A DNA stretch of 64,000 nucleotides from Macrostomum hystrix (Eukaryota; Animalia; Platyhelminthes), in NCBI GenBank assembly GCA_950097015.1, contig CATNEN010000039.1:8060001-8124000 (forward strand). The letters are read 5' to 3'. Position 1 is the stretch's first letter. Every line of letters starts with the position of its first letter. A program made the position numbers and the translations under genes. The notes under the pieces are model-generated. The model searched no databases. It was given only the letters and a program-made list of their open reading frames with translations, and was not told where the DNA came from. This document shows, in pieces, positions 1-9,365 of the stretch.

Positions 1-1115
1 GTCAGTCAGGCAGATCATCAGCTCAGTCAGTCAGTCAGTCAGATCATCAGCTCAGTCAGTCAGTCAGTCAGATCATCAGCTCAGTCAGTCAGTCAGGCAG
101 ATCATCAGCTCAGACAGTCAGTCAGGCAGATCTTCAGCTCAGTCAGTCAGGCAGATCATCAGCTCAGACAGTCAGTCAGGCAGATCATCAGCTCAGACAG
201 TCAGTCAGGCAGATCATCAGCTCAGTCAGTCAGGCAGATCATCAGCTCAGACAGTCAGTCAGGCAGATCATCAGCTCAGACAGTCAGTCAGGCAGATCAT
301 CAGCTCAGTCAGTCAGTCAGGCAGATCATCAGCTCAGTCAGTCAGTCAGGCAGATCATCAGCTCAGACAGTCAGTCAGGCAGATCATCAGCTCAGACAGT
401 CAGTCAGGCAGATCATCAGCTCAGACAGTCAGTCAGGCAGATCATCAGCTCAGACAGTCAGTCAGGCAGATCATCAGCTCAGTCAGTCAGGCAGATCATC
501 AGCTCAGACAGTCAGTCAGGCAGATCATCAGCTCAGACAGTCATTCAGGCAGATCATCAGCTCAGACAGACAGTCAGGCAGATCATCAGCTCAGACAGTC
601 AGGCAGATCATCAGCTCAGACAGTCAGTCAGGCAGATCATCAGCTCAGACAGACAGTCAGGCAGATCATCAGCTCAGACAGTCAGTCAGGCAGATCATCA
701 GCTCAGACAGACAGTCAGGCAGATCATCAGCTCAGACAGTCAGTCAGGCAGATCATCAGCTCAGACAGACAGTCAGGCAGATCATCAGCTCAGTCAGTCA
801 GGCAGATCATCAGCTCAGTCAGTCAGTCAGGCAGATCATCAGCTCAGACAGTCAGTCAGGCAGATCATCAGCTCAGACAGTCAGTCAGGCAGATCATCAG
901 CTCAGTCAGTCAGGCAGATCATCAGCTCAGTCAGTCAGTCAGGCAGATCATCAGCTCAGACAGTCAGTCAGGCAGATCATCAGCTCAGACAGTCAGTCAG
1001 GCAGATCATCAGCTCAGACAGTCAGTCAGGCAGATCATCAGCTCAGACAGTCAGTCAGGCAGATCATCAGCTCAGACAGTCAGTCAGGCAGATCATCAGC
1101 TCAGACAGTCAGTCA
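1..1115. repeat. Intronic minisatellite, 25-29 bp unit (GTCA)nGGCAGATCATCAGCTCAGACA
   Basis: Directly visible tandem array; runs off the window start. Confidence 0.97.
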
Positions 1116-1149
1116 ATGAACAGAAGCCTATCTCGCAATTGTGTTGCAG

Positions 1150-4100
1150 CTTCGAGCATCCCGTGAACCAGACGGTGGCCAAGAAGGTCATCGACCAGGC
1201 TCAGGCAACTTCCGGCATCACAGCCGGTGCAGAAACTTGGCGCAGTGAGTCATTTTGTTAGAGAACAAATCATATAAGAGTTTGAAATATTTTTACTCGT
1301 AAACTGTGCCATAATATTCAAACTTATGAGAGAATATTTAGCTTTGCTCTTACTGAAATAAGAATCTAAATGCTTATTGATACTCAGAAATCAGTGTGAT
1401 TAGTTTTTTCGCTTTTTACATTACTTGTTCTACTAAGTAAGCTCAGTAGCCAGATGCTCATCTCAGCAGAATGGTATGCAATTAAGTGATAAAATAGCGT
1501 TGCAGAGGTTTACAGAGAACAATGGGTGAAAGTGTTTGCAAGTCTGCCAGTTGAACAAAAGCACTATTGAGCCGGTTCAAGGGTCTATGTATAATTCCTT
1601 GTTTGTATTTATTGTCCTGTAATTTTTTGTTAAACTCTAAAGTTGTTCCGCAGTTCTCCCAACTAAAGCTTCTGTTTATATTCAAGCTCATTATTTATCT
1701 ATTGATTGAGGGGGGGCAGACTTAATTTCAAAAATGCGCCTTATAGGCGCCAACAATTTTCAATTCTATGCATTAATCAGCCAAATCAATTTAGCGAATC
1801 AATTATCTTGTTTTGGTCCATAAAATTATGAACAGAGGTCGCAATATTGCAAGTCCTTTGGACAATAATAAACATGTCGAATTTTGATTGGGCTACTGCT
1901 ACTACTGCTAGTAGAAATGAAAGGTTTAACGCTACGAAGAAAAACGGGTCGCATCGAGTAGTTGAACTGTTAATAATACATTTTTCCAGCCGTGCTGGGA
2001 TCTGTCTACGCGCAGTACAGACAGCCAGTGCTGTCCAATCGTAGAAATGTGGCCAAGTTTTACAGGCGCACAATGGTAAGTGTCTTGCTCGACTGCAACT
2101 TCTGGTCGGACGGAAAATTTGTGTTTAATTTTAATTGTCCTTTTGCACTTTAGTTGGCCCCACATCCTAATTGAGTAGATGTTGCTGAGTCTAAGCTGGG
2201 ACTCTAAGATGTAGACTTCTGCCAATGCTATGTATTATAGCCAGATTGTTTGTAAGGAATTCATTAAATGGAACTTGATGACAATTCCTATCATAATATA
2301 TTCCTAGCTGTATGCCTACATGAGTTCCGCAACATGCAGCAGGCTAGCCTGCGGGCCAGGCCTATTTGGCGAAAGAGTAACAGACAGAAGGCTGTGAGTT
2401 AGCTGCATGTGTGACCTCTTGTTGCTGTGTGTATACTTGTAGTTACTGTTCGTTACTGTCCCAGGTGACAGACAGTATTTTATATGATATGGCTGTCCCA
2501 GGTGACAGACAGTATTTGATATGCTATACCTGTCCCAGGTGACAGACAGTGTTTTATATGCTATACCTGTCCCAGGTGACAGACAGTATTTTATATGATA
2601 TGGCTGTCCCAGGTGACAGACAGTATTCGATATGCTATACCTGTCCCAGGTGACACAGGTATTTGATATGCTATTCCTGTCCCAGGTGACAGACATTATT
2701 TGATATGATATTAGCTGTCCCAGGTGACAGACAGTATTTGATATGCTATACCTGTCCCAGGTGACAGACAGTATTTGATATGCTATACCTGTCCCAGGTG
2801 ACAGACAGTATTTGATATGCTATACCTGTCCCAGGTGACAGACAGTATTTGATATGATATGGCTGTCCCAGGTGACAGACAGTATTTTATATGCTGTACC
2901 TGTCCCAGGTGACAGACAGTATTTGATATGATATGGCTGTCCCAGGTGACAGACAGTATTTGATATGATATAGCTGTCCCAGGTGACAGACAGTATTTGA
3001 TATGATATAGCTGTCCCAGGTGACAGACAGTATTTGATATGCTATACCTGTCCCAGGTGACAGACAGTATTTGATATGATATAGCTGTCCCAGGTGACAG
3101 ACAGTATTTGATATGCTATACCTGTCCCAGGTGACACAGGTATTTGATATGCTATTCCTGTCCCAGGTGACAGGCAGTATTTGATATGCTATACCTGTCC
3201 CAGGTGACAGACAGTATTTGATATGCTATACCTGTCCCAGGTGACAGACAGTATTTGATATGATATTAGCTGTCCCAGGTGACAGACAGTATTTGATATG
3301 ATATAGCTGTCTCAGGTGACAGACAGTATTTGATATGCTATACCTGTCCCAGGTGACAGGCAGTATTTGATATGCTATACCTGTCCCAGGTGACAGACAG
3401 TATTTGATATGCTATACCTGTCCCAGGTGACAGACAGTATTTGATATGCTATACCTGTCCCAGGTGACAGGCAGTATTTGATATGCTATTCCTGTCCCAG
3501 GTGACAGACAGTATTTGATATGCTATACCTGTCCTTGGTGACAGGCAGTATTTGATATGATATACCTGTCCCAGTTGACAGACAGTATTTCATACAATTT
3601 TATCCGCTTAGTTGACTATGGCTTAAAATTAAATGTTATATTATAGATGTTTTTGTAACCTCTTCAACGCATATTATTATGTATTGTAAAGTTTTACTCT
3701 GTCAATTAGCCTTGTTATTTTTCCTCACCTGTCCACAATTAAGGCGTTTTACTGAAGTGGTTTGTGGCCCAAAGTATTAGCATGGAGAGACACAGGAAAA
3801 GTGCCAAACGGTCCAAGCGTTGGAAGACAGTAAGGATAGAGTATGTATGCCAAATTAAATTAACAATAAATCAAACACGTTAATACCTCGCGGTTTCACT
3901 GTGTGAGCCTCTACAACGCAATTTTAGTTATCTGGGCAATAAATTAAGCTGACAGGTTTGAAAACTAATTAACTGCCTTTATTCTCACAGAACGGCTAAC
4001 AACTTGGTTCAATTCGCAGAGCACTATAATGATTAGAAATCGTAAAAGTGCCAAAAAGTCGTCCCGTTTGCGAAATGTGAGCTCTTGCCTACTGAAAGTA

Positions 4101-6915
4101 GCGTTGTTCGCGTTTTCTCTTAAAATGCTGCAATAAAAATCGGCTGACACTGCGGAACCTCTTGCTAGTGAACTTTGATTTGTGTAGCAGATTCGTTCCA
4201 ATAAAAAGAATAATAATAATAACTCACCCAGGCAGCCTTCTCACCTGGTTCACGGCTGAGGGACTTAACATTATAAAGCATCGGAAGAGTGCCAAGAAGT
4301 CATTTAGATGGAAGTCTGTAAGCCCGCAATCTGCAAAGTAGACCTCTGTAACCTAATCATATTTTGTTTCGGGCGAGTTTTAACAGTAACAAATGGCTTA
4401 AAAATATTGTCTCTCAATTATAAATGTTTGTACTTTTAGCCTCTGTTGAGTACTTTTTCATCCGGTTGAGCAATGTGATAATGTCGAATCGGCGCAGCGC
4501 CAAGAAATTTAATCGAATGCGCATGGTTAGTATCTATGCTACTGCTGTAAGTAGTAGCATTAATTTTGGCGATGCTCATTTCCGGTAATGTTCTCTAACA
4601 AAGACCTCTGTAACTAAATGAACTTAGTGTGACAAGTATTTTCTACAAACCTACTAGCTGAATATGTTTGTTGCACTTTTAGCCTATGTGGAGTGCTTTT
4701 ACAGGCGATTGGCTCATATAATCCTGTACAATCGCCGAACAGCCAGAAAGTCGGCCCGCCTACGCATGGTTAGTTTCAGCTTGGGCCTTAATGTATATAA
4801 GATATGCTTGGTGGTCTTTGTTGCAGTTTTATGAAAAGAAAACATTTTTCTACTCTGTCAATCTCTGCCAAATTCGATTAGCCCTAGTCTAGAAGAAGAA
4901 TTTTTTTATGAATTTCCTGATAAAAAAACTAAATTAAGCAACTCGCGACAACATGAAACTTGCATTCGACCTGGAAAAGAAGTCAGTGCTGGATAGTAGA
5001 AAGCGGGCTGGTCGATCTAATCGGATGAAGTCGGTAAATATTGTGCCATCTTAAATACGAATTTTAGAAGCGATGCTTCACTCCAGTGTACATTCTTCCT
5101 TCCCGGACTGCCCTCCACGTACACCACACTGGCTCCTGTGCTAACCCCTATCCCCTCACACCCCAGTGTACATTCTTCCTTCCCCGACACAAAACAGCCA
5201 AACCCCTATCCCCTCACACCCCAGTGTACATTCTTCCTTCCCCGACACAAAACAGCCAAACCCCTATCCCCTCACACCCCAGTGTACATTCTTCCTTCCC
5301 CGACACAAAACAGCCAAACCCCTATCCCCTCACCCCAGTGTACATTCTTCCTTCCCCGACACAAAACAGCCAAACCCCTATCCCCTCACACCCCAGTGTA
5401 CATTCTTCCTTCCCCGACACAAAACAGCCAAACCCCTATCCCCTCACACCCCAGTGTACATTCTTCCTTCCTCGACACAAAACAGCCAAACCCCTATCCC
5501 CTCACACCCCAGTGTACATTCTTCCTTCCCCGACACAAAACAGCCAAAACCCTATCCCCTCACACCCCAGTGTACATTATTACTTCCCGGCATCATTATT
5601 TTAACTCTTGTTTGCCCTGTTCGCTGCAACAATTTTTTCCAGCTATTTTGTTTGCGGTCAGAGTTGTTTATATTAGTTTGGGATTTTTAGTAAAACAAGC
5701 CGATCTTGCAAACATTATTTCTAATGGAAACTTACGAGAAACTCGTATCTTTAGGAAATGATATCAAATTTTCATGTTCGAAATTCAACTCTTCCAGTTA
5801 CCATTGGCAAATACTTTTCTCACGAACTGAAATGGATCCTTGTGCGCAGAAAGTCTGCAGCCAAGAGTTCCAGATTGAAACGGGTAAGATTCAATAGATC
5901 AATGCCGCTTTTCAGCAAAGCAAATCGGATTCCACCGACTTTAGCAAAAATGGTTTTGGTTCGTTGAGTTCCTGATTCATTGAAATCCTGGATCTTTGAA
6001 TTCTTGATTCCCTGAAGTACAAATTCATTGAAATCCCAATTCATCGAAATCCCAATTCCATAACATCCCAATTTATCGAAATCCCAATTCCTTAAATTCC
6101 CAATTCATCGAACTACCAATCGAAATCCAAATCATTAAAATCCCCAGTCCTTAAAATCCCAATTCATCGAAATCCCAATTCCTTAAAATCCCAATTCATC
6201 AAAATCCCAATTCCATAAAATCCCAATTTATCGAAATCCCAATTCCTTAAAATCCCAATTCATCGAAATCCCAATTCCTTAAAATCCCAATTCATCAAAA
6301 TCCCAATTCCATAAAATCCCAATTCATTGAAATTTCTATTCCCAACCTCCCGGCTTTTTTATTGCCTAAACCAACGAACCAGTAACCGGAAACCAATAGA
6401 TGGACCGCTGAAACACCACGTCGAAGCTAGTTCTTTTTTGTGCATTAAAAATAAAATTTAATTCGCTATTTCAACGAATATTTAGAAACATTTCCTGAAT
6501 TTGGCACTGCAGTAGTATGCGTCGAGTGTTTCTAGACCGTAAACAACGAGAGTTTTTTCAATAAAATATCCATCTCAAACAGAAGCTCAGCCGGCGTCAG
6601 AAGGCTTTCGAGACTCTGTTGCCGAATCTGTCGCCGGACGATCTTGAGCAGTATCGCATTGTGCTAACCAGAGATTTGACCTCGTCAGACGAGGAGGAAG
6701 AGGACGAGACCCTCCGAGTCCGCTGCCTGGCCTGGGAGTCGGCCCGGGTGCGAGACATCAAGCGCAACCTGGACGAAGCTTTCATGCGGCGATTCGCCAC
6801 CGTCAAACAGCGGGCCCAGCTAAGCAAGTGCGTCCGCGACGACTCCGTTAGAAGTCAACGACCCATTCCGCCTGGCACGCCTGAGTGGGTCATTGGGTCG
6901 GCCTTTCTGCCCTGA
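1150..6915 (+). CDS. 3' part of a C14orf93-like gene: constitutive exon 1150-1244, one of nine alternative exons, terminal exon 6583-6915 (5' end lies upstream of the window)
   Basis: Exon 1150-1244 (ttgcag|...|gtgagt) reads FEHPVNQTVAKKVIDQAQATSGITAGAETWR and ends in phase 1. Exon 6583-6915 (aaacag|AAG, phase 0) reads KLSRRQKAF...LTSSDEEEE...RVRCLAWES...LD...SQRPIPPGTPEW*. The motif layout resembles the C-terminal domain of C14orf93 as recalled from memory, not searched. Confidence 0.75.
1251..1473 (+). promoter_or_regulatory. Putative LCR-like intronic RNA structure (basal stem plus internal hairpins)
   Basis: CATTTTGTTAGAGA (1251-1264) pairs with TCTCAGCAGAATG (1461-1473). Internal stems at 1271-1291/1313-1328 and TTACTT/AAGTAA (1421-1440). 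Confidence 0.55.
1494..1521 (+). promoter_or_regulatory. Putative splicing docking site ATAGCGTTGCAGAGGTTTACAGAGAACA
   Basis: Its reverse complement recurs, with G-U-compatible changes, ~65-85 nt upstream of cassettes B-H and weakly upstream of cassette I. Confidence 0.75.
1990..2075 (+). CDS. Alternative cassette exon A (86 nt): (T)VLGSVYAQYRQPVLSNRRNVAKFYRRTM
   Basis: ttccag|...|gtaagt; phase 1 to phase 0; open frame. Confidence 0.85.
2308..2393 (+). CDS. Alternative cassette exon B (86 nt): (T)VCLHEFRNMQQASLRARPIWRKSNRQKA
   Basis: tcctag|...|gtgagt; phase 1 to 0; open frame; selector at 2210-2231. Confidence 0.82.
2456..3593. repeat. 37-bp minisatellite CTGTCCCAGGTGACAGACAGTATTTGATATGCTATAC
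   Basis: About 30 tandem copies between cassettes B and C. Confidence 0.97.
3744..3829 (+). CDS. Alternative cassette exon C (86 nt): (S)VLLKWFVAQSISMERHRKSAKRSKRWKT
   Basis: attaag|...|gtaagg; open frame; selector at 3654-3670. Confidence 0.85.
3991..4076 (+). CDS. Alternative cassette exon D (86 nt): (K)RLTTWFNSQSTIMIRNRKSAKKSSRLRN
   Basis: tcacag|...|gtgagc; open frame; selector at 3902-3926. Confidence 0.88.
4232..4317 (+). CDS. Alternative cassette exon E (86 nt): (S)SLLTWFTAEGLNIIKHRKSAKKSFRWKS
   Basis: acccag|...|gtaagc; open frame; selector at about 4154-4165. Confidence 0.88.
4440..4525 (+). CDS. Alternative cassette exon F (86 nt): (T)SVEYFFIRLSNVIMSNRRSAKKFNRMRM
   Basis: ttttag|...|gttagt; open frame; selector at 4338-4355. 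Confidence 0.88.
4683..4768 (+). CDS. Alternative cassette exon G (86 nt): (T)YVECFYRRLAHIILYNRRTARKSARLRM
   Basis: ttttag|...|gttagt; open frame; clear paralogue of F; selector at 4589-4614. Confidence 0.88.
4939..5033 (+). CDS. Alternative cassette exon H (95 nt): (T)TRDNMKLAFDLEKKSVLDSRKRAGRSNRMKS
   Basis: attaag|...|gtaaat; same phases as the other cassettes but 3 codons longer; selector at 4853-4868. Confidence 0.72.
5082..5580. repeat. 58-bp minisatellite (CCCCAGTGTACATTCTTCCTTCCCCGACACAAAACAGCC...)
   Basis: About 8 tandem copies; source of the three overlapping repetitive ORFs at 5086-5761. Confidence 0.95.
5798..5883 (+). CDS. Alternative cassette exon I (86 nt): (I)TIGKYFSHELKWILVRRKSAAKSSRLKR
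   Basis: ttccag|...|gtaaga; open frame. Confidence 0.87.
5970..6345. repeat. Degenerate AAATCCCAATTC-type tandem repeat
   Basis: Visible tandem array in the last intron. Confidence 0.9.
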
Positions 6916-9365
6916 CCTAATCATTCACTCGGGTTATTGTTATGGTTTGATCTTGCAGATCTATCGGAAGTAGGAAGAATCAATGCCTGTGGGTCTTTGT
7001 ACAACATCTGTCATATATTTAGCAATGTCACCAAATCTCAATCAAAACTGCAATGTAATTACTCTGACTTTAATCGTCTCTCAAATCCTTATCAATCTCC
7101 CAAATCCTTACCCATCTTCTCAAATGATTATCCTTCTCCCATAATCCTTGTCCATCTCCCAAGATCCTGTGTTAGGTAAATAAATTTTGTGATGAATATG
7201 TATATGCCAGCCTAACACAAGTTTACATAAGTTCAATCTAGCTCATTGTTCAACAACGTTATGTACTTTTGCTCTTTAAAGTGAATCACATTGAGACTAT
7301 TTTTCATAAGTACGAGTTTACTTTGACTTCATGCATGACTCACTTTGTAGCCTGTCAACTGGCGTTTTGCAATTGTTCTTTCTGCTGCATTTTATACTAA
7401 AAGTACTTTCTTAGCATTCGTGTTTTTATAAATGTTACCATGCTTACGGTCCATTAACCAATGTACTTCTGAGCTTGCACCTGCTCTCTCGTTCTGCATC
7501 TCTCCTATTCTCTCCCATTTAATTATTTAGTTTCAATGATATACGAGCTAAAATTAATTTGACTGGAAATCTATGCTAAATAAACATTGACATCGTTGTT
7601 CAGTTTGGTTTTAACATGCTTGCGTGTAATTGTTTTACATATTTGTTATTTGTGTGTTACTATCCGCAGCCAGAATTTATCGCCTATATAAGCGTAGGCA
7701 TGATTTTCGAAACTAAAAATACACAGTTTAATACTAGCTGACTTGTATTTGTCTTTATTAATGACAGCTTAAATTAGCAGTGCAAAATTATCATTGATAA
7801 TCAATCATGCTAGTGTTTGTTTCTACATTTAATTTTTACGTTATGACTATCCGTTCAATATTGGATTTAGTTCATATCGGTATCCTAATAACGTATTAAT
7901 ACTTACAATCGTAATATACGTGAACGATAGTTGTGAATAAATGCTTTAAAATGTTTGCCAGATGGCTAAACTAAATTTAGTATAATAGACTAGCAATTTG
8001 AACCCCCTCAATTTTTCTTTTAATTCTCGACATTTTCTGCGGTCTAAGCGTCTGTATCCACTTGTTTTGTTTGGGACTTGTCGACCCCAGATACAAATTG
8101 AACAGCAAATTTATCTGGGGTTAAAAGATTCATTTAATTGAGGAAGTGCCCCAGTCTACGGACTGAACAGCAGCTGTATGCAGCGCTATAGCTGCCACTG
8201 TCCGGCCCAACTGGCTAGGTGTACTTGCTATTACCTATATTCTCTTTCATCAACCATATTTCCGATCCCAATACCTATTCCTAGCCATTAAACGTACAGG
8301 AAAAACTATATTATAAATCATATTTGGGAAATTGATTTGTAAGTGGAAATGATTAAGGTATATTGAACTGATATTTAAAATTATCCATATCAATCAAAGC
8401 ACAGGTACATATTCATAAATTCATCATACGTTGGTGCCAAATTTTGCTATTTTATCGGGTTATCTACCAATAATGTAAACCAATGAGCAAATCTTTACGA
8501 CGGTATTACAAATCAAACAAAGTCCAACCTCGTGACGAAACAATCCGACGACAGGGGCGTTCAATCAAAATCACATTTTGCAGGTTGCGGCACGCAAATG
8601 TACGAATTTTCCACTATCGCTGGCCTAGAGTTATTGAATATTTGATTGATTTGCCATAAAATGCATCGACTGACTGACTCAGGTGGAGAAATTGTGGTGT
8701 ATTAAGATATCTAACCCCCGCGCAATTGTCTTATTTTGGCCATCAGCTCCCGCAGCTGATCAGTTATTCGGAATCAATTTTCATTGCCTGACTAAAGAAT
8801 GGCAGCTGAGACCCGATCAGCATCAGGACCGACTGGGGAATTTGAAGAAAATAACGACCAAAAATGAGCGATAGCGACATTATTTGCTGCGGGTGGAGGG
8901 CACGCCAAGTGTCTGCAAAACCAAACGGGCCTCATTAGCAATTTATCAGCAATTGGAGATGGCATGACATCAGCCTGGTAGCTGCCTGATTATGCCATTT
9001 TCAACGCAAGGCCGAATGGCGCAAGTGATAACCGTACGTCCTTCTCAAAATCGCGTGACGATTCGCCCAGCCTCCAAAGTCTTGGCCCCGTCATCAGAGC
9101 AAACCTGCGCCAGCTCCATGTAGCTTGATCTGCTCGCGACTAGACCCGACTCCTTGCTGTCGAATTGAGATATTTTAATGCGTGGCCCCATCAACCCAGC
9201 CGCGGATCGCTTCTTTGGGATTTAGGGATTTGGTGCTCCTGGGATCTGGGCTCAATATAAATAAGAGAATAGGCGGGTCGCCAAATCCGCCGCATCGCTC
9301 GCCTAAGAAGCAGCTCTCCAAGCAGCCACTCGCCAAAGCCAGTTTCTCACCGATTAGCCGCAAAG

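What the first reader, a model, noticed from the sequence alone, without database searches (positions are those of the whole stretch)
1150..6915. Dscam-like array of nine mutually exclusive exons in a C14orf93-like gene
Seen in the sequence: nine AG...GT-bounded open cassettes lie between a phase-1 donor (1244) and a phase-0 acceptor (6583), at 1990, 2308, 3744, 3991, 4232, 4440, 4683, 4939 and 5798. Eight are exactly 86 nt and one is 95 nt. They are mutually homologous at the protein level: an aromatic residue or pair (WF, YF, FF, FY) early, then a [NH]R[KR]SA[KR]K-like basic patch in most. Each length is 2 mod 3, so including zero or two cassettes frameshifts the terminal exon, while exactly one restores KLSRRQ.... 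Established knowledge: this is the architecture of mutually exclusive clusters such as Dscam1 and Mhc in arthropods. Inference: one gene makes at least nine isoforms differing in a single ~29-aa segment. I know of no description of such a cluster in this protein family or in flatworms, but could not search.
Basis: partly seen in the sequence, partly recalled or inferred. Interest (0 to 1): 0.95.

Follow-up and report, generated by a model that had tools for sequence, protein, structure and literature searches.

The report
Flatworm nine-exon pick-one splicing array
A Macrostomum flatworm gene of unknown function carries nine alternative versions of one short exon, only one of which fits per mRNA, and its introns carry the same "docking site plus selectors" RNA-pairing layout that insect Dscam1 uses to choose one exon, which I could not find described outside arthropods.

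Summary
Nine AG..GT cassettes (eight of 86 nt, one of 95 nt) lie between a phase-1 donor at 1244 and a phase-0 acceptor at 6583. All are open only in the frame set by the upstream exon.

- **Old coding duplicates:** third codon positions are near random and dS is saturated.
- **Docking site:** a 30-mer at 1495-1524 pairs with elements 50-145 nt upstream of c2-c9 (z = -9 against shuffles).
- **Paralog arrays:** at least four other family genes in this genome carry arrays (13, 7, 6 and 4 cassettes). Each has its own dock, which pairs best with its own gene's cassette flanks.
- **Congener evidence:** in Macrostomum lignano, a gene model carries a c2-type cassette. Transcript-based proteins carry a c3-type cassette or none (frameshifted).

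Weak points:
- c1 has no significant homolog and only a weak selector.
- Use of all nine cassettes is not shown.
- "C14orf93-like" failed every Pfam test.

The scan has already noted sister arrays on other contigs of this genome. I found no publication describing this.

The parts
1150..1244 (+). Constitutive upstream exon (third coding exon; FEHPVNQTVAKKVIDQAQATSGITAGAETWR + 1 nt), phase-1 donor GTGAGT
   Evidence: aligns to M. lignano P0176/P0007/P0180 at 76-81% identity. Exons 1 and 2 lie before the window start, at about G000:C39:8058828-8059670.
1488..1530 (+). Predicted docking site (core 1496-1520, contains GCGTTGCAGAGGTTTACAGAG), about 250 nt downstream of the constitutive donor
   Evidence: Median duplex energy with the cassette upstream flanks is -26.6 kcal/mol, against -15.9 +/- 1.2 for 200 dinucleotide shuffles. 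None of 1900 genomic 30-mers reaches it. The core TTGCAGAGGTTT recurs in the dock of paralog L034.
1990..2075 (+). Cassette c1, 86 nt (weakest member)
   Evidence: AG/GTAAGT, open frame; not significantly similar to the others (E 6); no counterpart in paralogs or ortholog. Only a weak candidate selector at 1646-1700 (-23.3).
2204..2237 (+). Selector upstream of c2
   Evidence: -33.0 kcal/mol with the 43-nt dock; ends 71 nt before the acceptor.
2308..2393 (+). Cassette c2, 86 nt
   Evidence: z 17-20 to the single exon of the C11 paralog and to the cassette in M. lignano A0A1I8GSM9 (P0007), where it sits between the same flanking exons.
3640..3681 (+). Selector upstream of c3
   Evidence: -28.2 kcal/mol; 16 Watson-Crick + 2 G-U pairs of 25 ungapped; 63 nt before the acceptor.
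3744..3829 (+). Cassette c3, 86 nt
   Evidence: E 6e-7; z 12 to the cassette in the transcript-based M. lignano protein PAA82238 (P0176).
3883..3927 (+). Selector upstream of c4
   Evidence: -37.6 kcal/mol; 17 WC + 2 GU of 25; 64 nt before the acceptor.
3991..4076 (+). Cassette c4, 86 nt
   Evidence: E 3.5e-9.
4148..4173 (+). Selector upstream of c5 (weaker)
   Evidence: alignment (..GGAACCTCTTGCTAG..). Duplex -20.3 with the 30-mer; 59 nt before the acceptor.
4232..4317 (+). Cassette c5, 86 nt
   Evidence: E 2.5e-7.
4321..4369 (+). Selector upstream of c6
   Evidence: -32.9 kcal/mol; 71 nt before the acceptor.
4440..4525 (+). Cassette c6, 86 nt
   Evidence: E 7e-8.
4573..4615 (+). Selector upstream of c7
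   Evidence: -32.7 kcal/mol; 68 nt before the acceptor.
4683..4768 (+). Cassette c7, 86 nt
   Evidence: E 6e-6.
4842..4890 (+). Selector upstream of c8
   Evidence: -24.0 kcal/mol; 17 WC + 2 GU of 25; 49 nt before the acceptor.
4939..5033 (+). Cassette c8, 95 nt (also 2 mod 3)
   Evidence: E 7.5e-3.
5603..5653 (+). Selector upstream of c9 (further from its exon, 145 nt)
   Evidence: -30.5 kcal/mol with the 43-nt dock. The proximal 150 nt alone give only -10 with the 30-mer.
5798..5883 (+). Cassette c9, 86 nt
   Evidence: E 4e-4; z 12 to an 86-nt cassette of the C32 paralog.
6583..6915 (+). Constitutive terminal coding exon (110 aa, KLSRRQK...SSDEE...LAWES...; stop at 6913-6915), phase-0 acceptor
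   Evidence: About 90% identical to the M. lignano ortholog. At least 25 paralogs in the genome all have the intron at the same place and phase. The domain occurs across Metazoa.

Best explanation
This is a real cluster of tandemly duplicated, mutually exclusive exons in a Macrostomum gene (about G000:C39:8058828-8066915, + strand). The gene belongs to a large family of unknown function.

Proposed mechanism. The pre-mRNA carries one docking site (1488-1530) in the intron after the constitutive exon 1150-1244. Each of cassettes c2-c9 has a complementary selector 50-145 nt upstream of its acceptor. Only one selector can occupy the single dock at a time. That pairing loops out the upstream cassettes and presents one cassette for splicing to exon 1150-1244. 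The cassette's donor then joins the terminal exon at 6583.

Reading frame is a second safeguard. Every cassette is 2 mod 3, so only a single inclusion restores the KLSRRQK... C-terminal domain.

Each isoform differs in about 29 residues. In the AlphaFold model of a paralog these form the middle of one long helix (an aromatic/amphipathic stretch followed by a basic patch) that runs into the conserved C-terminal domain. The array therefore most likely diversifies a binding surface.

Shown: anatomy, frame logic, coding constraint, dock-selector complementarity and its recurrence in paralog arrays, and alternative cassette use in M. lignano proteins. Inferred: that pairing drives the choice, that all nine are used, and what the variable helix binds.
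For: 1. Exact lengths, splice sites and single open frame.
2. Old duplicates kept as coding sequence. Identity is 0.57-0.79 at codon positions 1-2 and 0.36-0.43 at position 3. dN is 0.28-0.51 while dS is saturated.
3. The dock 30-mer 1495-1524 pairs with the upstream flanks of c1-c8 at -20 to -31 kcal/mol, median -26.6. That is z = -9 against 200 dinucleotide shuffles, and 0 of 1900 genomic 30-mers reach it. The reverse complement of the dock aligns with a conserved block ..CTnTGTAnACCTCTGCAAC.. upstream of the cassettes.
4. Independent recurrence. Arrays exist in paralogs L035 (13 cassettes), L036 (7), L047 (4) and L034 (6). Each has a best-pairing window in the equivalent intron. The three 77-nt genes share an invariant island of about 18 nt (CTGGAAACGTCGCAAGT) in introns that otherwise barely align.
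5. Swap test. Each dock pairs best with its own gene's flanks (-22.6 to -26.6), except L035, whose dock scores slightly better on the flanks of the related L036 (-24.5). Unrelated genes give background values of -12 to -15.
6. Single-cassette paralogs have only 69-78 nt introns at this position and no room for a dock.
7. M. lignano ortholog. A gene model carries a c2-type cassette between the same flanks (P0007, P0151). Transcript-based PAA82238 carries a c3-type cassette. PAA46591 and PAA94808 skip all cassettes and are frameshifted.
8. M. lignano paralog. PAA67809/PAA69370 and PAA53622 differ only in which of two cassettes sits between identical flanks. The PAA annotation is RNA-seq based (PMC5730564).
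9. The cassette lies in a helix spanning residues 315-363 with pLDDT of about 90-96.
Against:
Cross-species conservation of the dock and of each cassette is therefore untested.
- c1 has no significant similarity to the others, no ortholog evidence and only a weak selector.
- The c5 and c9 selectors are weaker or displaced.
- P0176 stops right after its cassette, so it proves only the exon-to-cassette junction.
- The c2-type evidence is a gene model, not a transcript.
- RNA pairing is predicted only. Selectors are partly similar because they are duplicates.
- What silences cassettes downstream of the chosen one is unknown.
Confidence: 0.72

Rival explanations
1. The cluster is mutually exclusive, but RNA pairing does not make the choice. 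Exclusivity comes from the frame rule (with decay or truncation of wrong products) and from trans-acting splicing factors. The dock-selector complementarity is a relic of how the duplications arose.
For: - Selectors resemble each other as expected for duplicated intron segments.
- Ivanov and Pervouchine (PMC6071210) describe how duplicating one arm of an intronic stem-loop yields such patterns automatically.
- C. elegans MXEs work largely without such structures (PMC4165533, listed).
- 35 of 36 double inclusions carry a premature stop.
Against: - Cassette third codon positions are near random between duplicates and dS is saturated, yet a complementary selector block survives upstream of the cassettes. 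Flanking introns did not score clearly lower than the selector zone in crude global alignments (0.47-0.68 against 0.53-0.70).
- The dock island is invariant among three paralogs on different contigs whose introns otherwise barely align.
- Dock and selectors co-vary between paralog groups.
Confidence: 0.15
2. Only a few cassettes (for example c2 and c3-type) are functional exons. The rest are decaying duplicates that happen to remain open.
For: - Evidence of use exists for only two cassette types, and only in a congener.
- c1 lacks homology and a good selector.
- The nearest paralogs manage with one or two cassettes.
Against: - All nine keep AG/GT, 2-mod-3 length (eight at exactly 86 nt) and an open frame, although they are only 24-63% identical in nucleotides.
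- The codon-position pattern shows protein-level constraint in every pair tested, including c4-c6 and c5-c9.
- c9 has a conserved counterpart in another paralog.
- Eight of the nine have selectors.
Confidence: 0.1
3. The cassettes are ordinary independent cassette exons, or exons of separate overlapping transcripts, and not a one-of-N system.
For: Some WormBase ParaSite models string two or three cassettes together (P0001, P0175, P0015).
Against: - Those models need non-canonical trimming or intron read-through to stay in frame.
- Lengths of 2 mod 3 make multi-inclusion out of frame.
- Transcript-based M. lignano proteins carry one cassette or none.
Confidence: 0.03

Closest known systems
Drosophila Dscam1 exon 6 cluster (docking site with selector sequences; Graveley model, as summarised in PMC6071210)
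   Same: - Tandem array of same-length homologous exons.
- One docking site in the intron just after the upstream constitutive exon.
- One complementary selector upstream of each variable exon, so pairings compete and one exon is chosen.
   Different: - 9 exons here against 48.
- The gene is not an Ig-superfamily receptor but an uncharacterised, mostly helical protein.
- The phylum is Platyhelminthes.
- The array sits immediately before the last coding exon, so cassette-less mRNA ends in a last-exon stop.
- No experimental test has been done, and no repressor (hrp36-like) is known here.
Insect 14-3-3zeta, Mhc and MRP1 clusters, and Dscam1 exons 4/9
   Same: Mutually exclusive clusters controlled by competing RNA structures.
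   Different: There the docking site lies downstream of the cluster (PMC6071210). Here the last intron gives no comparable signal (best median -20.2 against -26.6).
Flatworm myosin heavy chain MXE cluster-8 (PMC3912159)
   Same: Mutually exclusive tandem exons in Platyhelminthes.
   Different: That cluster has only two exons, is ancient and is shared with other animals. The text I read in that paper did not mention a docking-selector system.
Sister arrays in the same genome
   Same: The arrays are at C12:352500-362480 (13 cassettes), C2:6196200-6206180 (7), C34 (4) and C8:1409600-1419590 (6). They share the gene family, the array position before the KLxRRQK exon, lengths of 2 mod 3, and a dock in the equivalent intron.
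   Different: - Cassette length differs: 77 nt, or 80-113 nt.
- The peptide motif differs: LPKxGR..F..FR...
- The three 77-nt genes use a different dock sequence (CTGGAAACGTCGCAAGT).
- The window's gene is the only 86-nt-type array found genome-wide.

Membership tests
Tandem mutually exclusive exon (MXE) cluster | Neighbouring exons of one gene, with similar length | tested here: met
   Nine cassettes within 3.9 kb, eight of 86 nt and one of 95 nt.
Tandem mutually exclusive exon (MXE) cluster | Same splice phases and a conserved reading frame, so that only single inclusion keeps the frame | tested here: met
   All lengths are 2 mod 3, with a phase-1 donor upstream and a phase-0 acceptor downstream. 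Zero or two cassettes shift the frame.
Tandem mutually exclusive exon (MXE) cluster | Sequence homology among the exons | tested here: met
   Seven of nine are significant in leave-one-out HMM tests. c2 is linked through its ortholog and a paralog. c1 is not significant.
Tandem mutually exclusive exon (MXE) cluster | Exactly one exon of the cluster in each mature mRNA | tested here: inconclusive
   No reads were available for this species. In M. lignano there is a c2-type gene model, a c3-type transcript-based protein and zero-cassette transcripts. A paralog has two alternative single cassettes.
Docking-site/selector control (Dscam1 exon-6 type) | A single docking site in the intron after the upstream constitutive exon | tested here: met
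   Site at 1488-1530, an outlier against shuffles and genomic 30-mers. This is in silico only.
Docking-site/selector control (Dscam1 exon-6 type) | A selector complementary to the dock upstream of each variable exon | tested here: met
   Clear for c2, c3, c4, c6, c7 and c8. Weaker or displaced for c5 and c9. Doubtful for c1.
Docking-site/selector control (Dscam1 exon-6 type) | Evolutionary conservation or co-variation of dock and selectors | tested here: met
   Tested between paralogs: an invariant dock island in three genes, a shared core with L034 and a dock-by-flank swap matrix.
Docking-site/selector control (Dscam1 exon-6 type) | Disruptive and compensatory mutations change exon choice | not testable with these tools
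   Needs minigene or transgenic experiments.
C14orf93 / DUF4616 (Pfam PF15394) | Significant match to the PF15394 profile | tested here: not met
   - No match for the exons.
- No match for M. lignano full-length proteins.
- No match for Lingula, sea cucumber or hemichordate homologs.
- No match for all 51 members of A5.
- No match in the whole genome in six frames.
- The only link is an ESM Atlas neighbour cluster with 33% DUF4616 at score 0.92, which is a lead.
Dscam (Ig-superfamily receptor) | Ig and FNIII domains | tested here: not met
   No Pfam domains at all. The model is helical with a small alpha/beta C-terminal part. The resemblance is in splicing design only.

The most novel reading that the evidence does not exclude
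The window's array is one locus of a Macrostomum-wide diversification system. A gene family of at least 25 members has repeatedly built pick-one exon arrays (more than 40 cassettes in at least five genes). Each array has its own co-evolving dock/selector 'address', and this arose independently of arthropods. The swapped segment is a specificity helix, so the family encodes a large repertoire of recognition variants for nucleic acid or protein targets. Choice may be cell-specific or stochastic, as in Dscam.
Probability: 0.3. Interest if true: 0.9.

Novelty: new member of a known kind. Interest (0 to 1): 0.8.

Why it matters
- **Reach of the mechanism.** Large mutually exclusive arrays governed by docking-selector RNA pairing are textbook biology for arthropod Dscam1 and a handful of insect genes. 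A nine-exon array with the same geometry in a flatworm, in an unrelated gene, would show that the mechanism arises readily wherever exons and one arm of an intronic stem are duplicated. That is the prediction of PMC6071210.
- **A natural experiment.** The paralog series in this genome has different docks, each matched by its own gene's or subfamily's selectors. That is a natural co-variation experiment Dscam does not offer.
- **Testability.** Macrostomum lignano has working transgenesis (PMC5730564), so the model can be tested directly.
- **The protein family.** The work flags a metazoan-wide, uncharacterised family whose one variable helix appears to be under diversifying use.
- **Annotation.** Current gene models mis-join these cassettes.

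Tried and rejected
- **The look-up of encoding contigs** for the M. lignano ortholog was closed.
- **The search for homologous proteins** with the terminal exon alone and with the Lingula homolog found nothing new. That tool is limited by query length and by its word index.
- **Pfam and Rfam.** Pfam found nothing for any piece or relative. PF15394 found nothing in the genome. Rfam found nothing in 1-7200.
- **PDB.** The sequence profile found nothing, Foldseek found nothing at E <= 0.001, and VIA-align's best Z of 6.7 is within noise for helical models. No known fold was identified.
- **Downstream docking site** (the Dscam exon 4/9 layout). The last intron gives only -20 median energy, so I rejected it.
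- **Strict DNA pattern searches** for selectors under-count them, because G-U pairs count as mismatches.
- **MAFFT** did not align the dock cores of the window gene and L034.
- **Joined exons.** Exons were searched one by one by reference. Exons were joined only inside a local script, for frame arithmetic.
- **bZIP-like basic region.** I considered this reading of the cassette's N-R-K-S-A-K-K-S-x-R patch. It rests on memory only, the spacing is off by one, and no zipper follows, so I did not adopt it.
Full report
**1. Observation.** The window is G000:C39:8060001-8124000, + strand, in a 220-Mb genome.

- Reading the sequence and extracting the proposed pieces confirms every coordinate.
- The exon 1150-1244 ends with one spare base before GTGAGT.
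- Nine AG|...|GT segments start at 1990, 2308, 3744, 3991, 4232, 4440, 4683, 4939 and 5798. Eight are 86 nt and c8 is 95 nt.
- Exon 6583-6915 starts in phase 0 with KLSRRQK and ends with a stop.
- Each cassette is open only in the frame handed on by the upstream exon. The other frames hold stops in 7 and 8 of the nine.
- A profile of the nine finds no second array of this type in the genome.
- In leave-one-out tests, c3-c7, c8 and c9 are recognised well above the best background hit in all six frames of the 64-kb window. c1 and c2 are not.
- Four other AG-86-GT open frames, at 5198-5571, are chance products of a 58-nt tandem repeat.

**2. The gene and its family.**

- The closest proteins are from Macrostomum lignano, so the organism is a congener. 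The terminal exon is about 90% identical to A0A1I8GSM9.
- Aligning M. lignano proteins to the DNA places two further exons just before the window start. The first starts at about C39:8058828.
- The terminal-exon domain (KLxRRQK, SSDEE, LxWES, LD, S-R-PPP, W) has at least 25 copies in this genome. All have the same phase-0 intron in front of KL.
- The domain has 740 representatives in the 1.84-billion-protein library, including Lingula, a sea cucumber, a hemichordate and amphioxus.
- Pfam recognises none of these. PF15394 (DUF4616, the C14orf93 family) matches nothing in the genome.
- The only pointer to DUF4616 is an ESM Atlas neighbour at 0.92. I therefore treat 'C14orf93-like' as an untested lead, not a finding.

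**3. Evidence that cassettes are used alternatively.** I could not obtain reads for this species or the M. lignano locus. M. lignano proteins give partial RNA-level evidence. This counts because the GenBank PAA annotation was built from a genome-guided RNA-seq assembly (PMC5730564).

For the ortholog of this gene:
- Models A0A1I8GSM9 and A0A1I8HID5 join the upstream exon, a c2-type cassette and the terminal exon.
- PAA82238 joins the upstream exon to a c3-type cassette and then stops.
- PAA46591 and PAA94808 join the upstream exon directly to the terminal exon. They read the same shifted frame that predicts for the cassette-less product.

For paralogs:
- PAA67809/PAA69370 and PAA53622 are identical except for which of two cassettes lies between the same flanks. 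Both cassettes exist in this genome's copy, L032.
- PAA59491 is a zero-cassette form of another paralog.
- Several ParaSite models string cassettes together, which looks like an annotation artefact.

**4. The array is one of several.** I scanned 10 kb upstream of each paralog's terminal exon. In every case the cassettes lie between the NQxV...W exon and the KL exon.

| Gene (locus) | Cassettes | Lengths |
|---|---|---|
| Window gene | 9 | eight of 86 nt, one of 95 nt |
| C12:352500-362480 (L035) | 13 | twelve of 77 nt, one of 71 nt |
| C2:6196200-6206180 (L036) | 7 | 77 nt |
| C34 (L047) | 4 | 77 nt |
| C8:1409600-1419590 (L034) | 6 | 80-113 nt, all 2 mod 3 |
| Nearest relatives of the window gene (L030-L033) | 1-2 | L030: one of 86 nt plus a second candidate; L031: 86 nt; L033: 83 nt; L032: 77 nt plus a second cassette |

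- Individual cassettes are conserved between species, up to 100% for L035:5617 and L047:8317 against M. lignano proteins.
- c2 and c9 have clear counterparts in the C11 and C32 paralogs (z 17 and 12). At least two cassette types are therefore older than those gene duplications.
- Between window cassettes, identity is 0.57-0.79 at codon positions 1-2 and 0.36-0.43 at position 3, with dS saturated. These are old duplicates held under protein-level constraint.

**5. Mechanism.**

- I slid 30-nt windows of the first intron against the 150 nt upstream of every cassette. This singles out 1495-1524, with duplexes of -20 to -31 kcal/mol for c1-c8 and a median of -26.6.
- Dinucleotide shuffles of that 30-mer give -15.9 +/- 1.2, and none of 200 reaches the observed value. 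None of 1900 30-mers from the rest of the window, on either strand, reaches it.
- With the 43-nt site 1488-1530, the partners lie 49-85 nt before the acceptors of c2-c8 and 145 nt before c9.
- Ungapped pairing reaches 17 Watson-Crick plus 2 G-U pairs of 25.
- The reverse complement of the dock aligns with a shared block upstream of the cassettes.
- The same scan on four paralog arrays finds one outstanding window in the equivalent intron of each.
- The three 77-nt genes share an invariant island of about 18 nt (CTGGAAACGTCGCAAGT) in introns that otherwise barely align. L034 shares the core TTGCAGAGGTTT with the window gene.
- In a swap test each dock pairs best with its own gene's flanks, less well with those of related genes, and at background with unrelated ones. 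The exception is the L035 dock, which scores slightly better on L036's flanks (-24.5 against -22.6). This is co-variation at the family level.
- Single-cassette paralogs have only 69-78 nt introns at this position.
- This is the geometry of Dscam1 exon 6 as summarised in PMC6071210. The last intron shows no comparable dock.
- Frame is a back-up. Zero cassettes give a 21-aa shifted tail with the stop in the last exon. In 35 of 36 cassette pairs a stop falls 41-77 nt before the last junction.

**6. What varies in the protein.**

- An AlphaFold model of the complete paralog protein P0010 was built on a 51-sequence alignment (A5). It is confident for residues 258-459 (pLDDT about 85-98).
- The cassette (residues 320-348) lies inside one long helix, 315-363, that continues into the terminal-exon domain.
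- No solved fold matches above noise.
- The variable part therefore re-surfaces one helix: an aromatic pair, then a basic patch. I infer a binding-specificity role. The target is unknown.

**7. Literature and earlier scan notes.**

- No paper in the library combines mutually exclusive exons with Macrostomum.
- Flatworm MXEs are described only as a two-exon cluster in myosin heavy chain (PMC3912159).
- Searches for docking and selector terms together with lophotrochozoan terms found nothing relevant.
- The scan itself has already noted sister arrays on other contigs of this genome, and a docking-site note on this stretch. I re-derived the seven-exon 77-nt array and the dock independently. I used those notes as leads only.

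**8. Verdict.**

- The MXE reading is strongly supported by anatomy, constraint, recurrence in paralogs and congener proteins.
- The docking-selector mechanism is supported in silico with good controls.
- Use of all nine cassettes, and c1 in particular, remains to be shown with RNA.
- The C14orf93 label is not supported.

Noticed in passing
window 1-1115, 2456-3594, 5143-5588, 6022-6333: The introns of this gene hold long tandem arrays: 29 nt x39, 37 nt x31 (unit with CTGTC..GACAG hairpin arms, between c2 and c3), 58 nt x7.7 (between c8 and c9) and 32 nt x10 (last intron). Their role, if any, in spacing or insulating the cassettes is unknown.
   Followed up: partly
L035:3265-8080 (G000:C12:352500-362480): A paralog carries 13 tandem cassettes, twelve of exactly 77 nt, with the motif LPKxGR..IF..FR...R.K.R. 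It has a dock at about 2857-2892. This is the largest array I saw in the family.
   Followed up: partly
L036:5992-8461; L047:6655-9108; L034:6971-8768: Further arrays have 7 (77 nt), 4 (77 nt) and 6 (80-113 nt) cassettes. L035, L036 and L047 share an invariant intronic island CTGGAAACGTCGCAAGT.
   Followed up: partly
M. lignano proteins P0180, P0181, P0153: Transcript-based proteins skip every cassette and read the terminal exon out of frame. The stop is in the last exon, so these mRNAs may be stable and encode truncated proteins that lack the conserved C-terminal domain. This could be a regulated 'off' isoform.
   Followed up: no
M. lignano proteins P0001, P0175, P0015: WormBase ParaSite gene models concatenate two or three cassettes or read through introns. 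These are probable mis-annotations caused by the arrays.
   Followed up: no
L031:7620-7688; L033:8214-8291: Paralogs with a single cassette have introns of only 69 and 78 nt where the array genes have 500-800 nt introns holding the dock.
   Followed up: yes
L002:2714-3115 and L003:875-1198 (G000:C39:8042717 and 8050875): Two more genes of the same family lie in tandem just upstream of this gene on the same contig.
   Followed up: no
window 3744-4768 (cassettes c3-c7): The basic patch N/H-R-K/R-S/T-A-K/R-K-S-x-R, followed by KLxRRQK, looks like a nucleic-acid-binding or nuclear-localisation segment. The resemblance to a bZIP basic region is from memory only, and the spacing is off by one.
   Followed up: no
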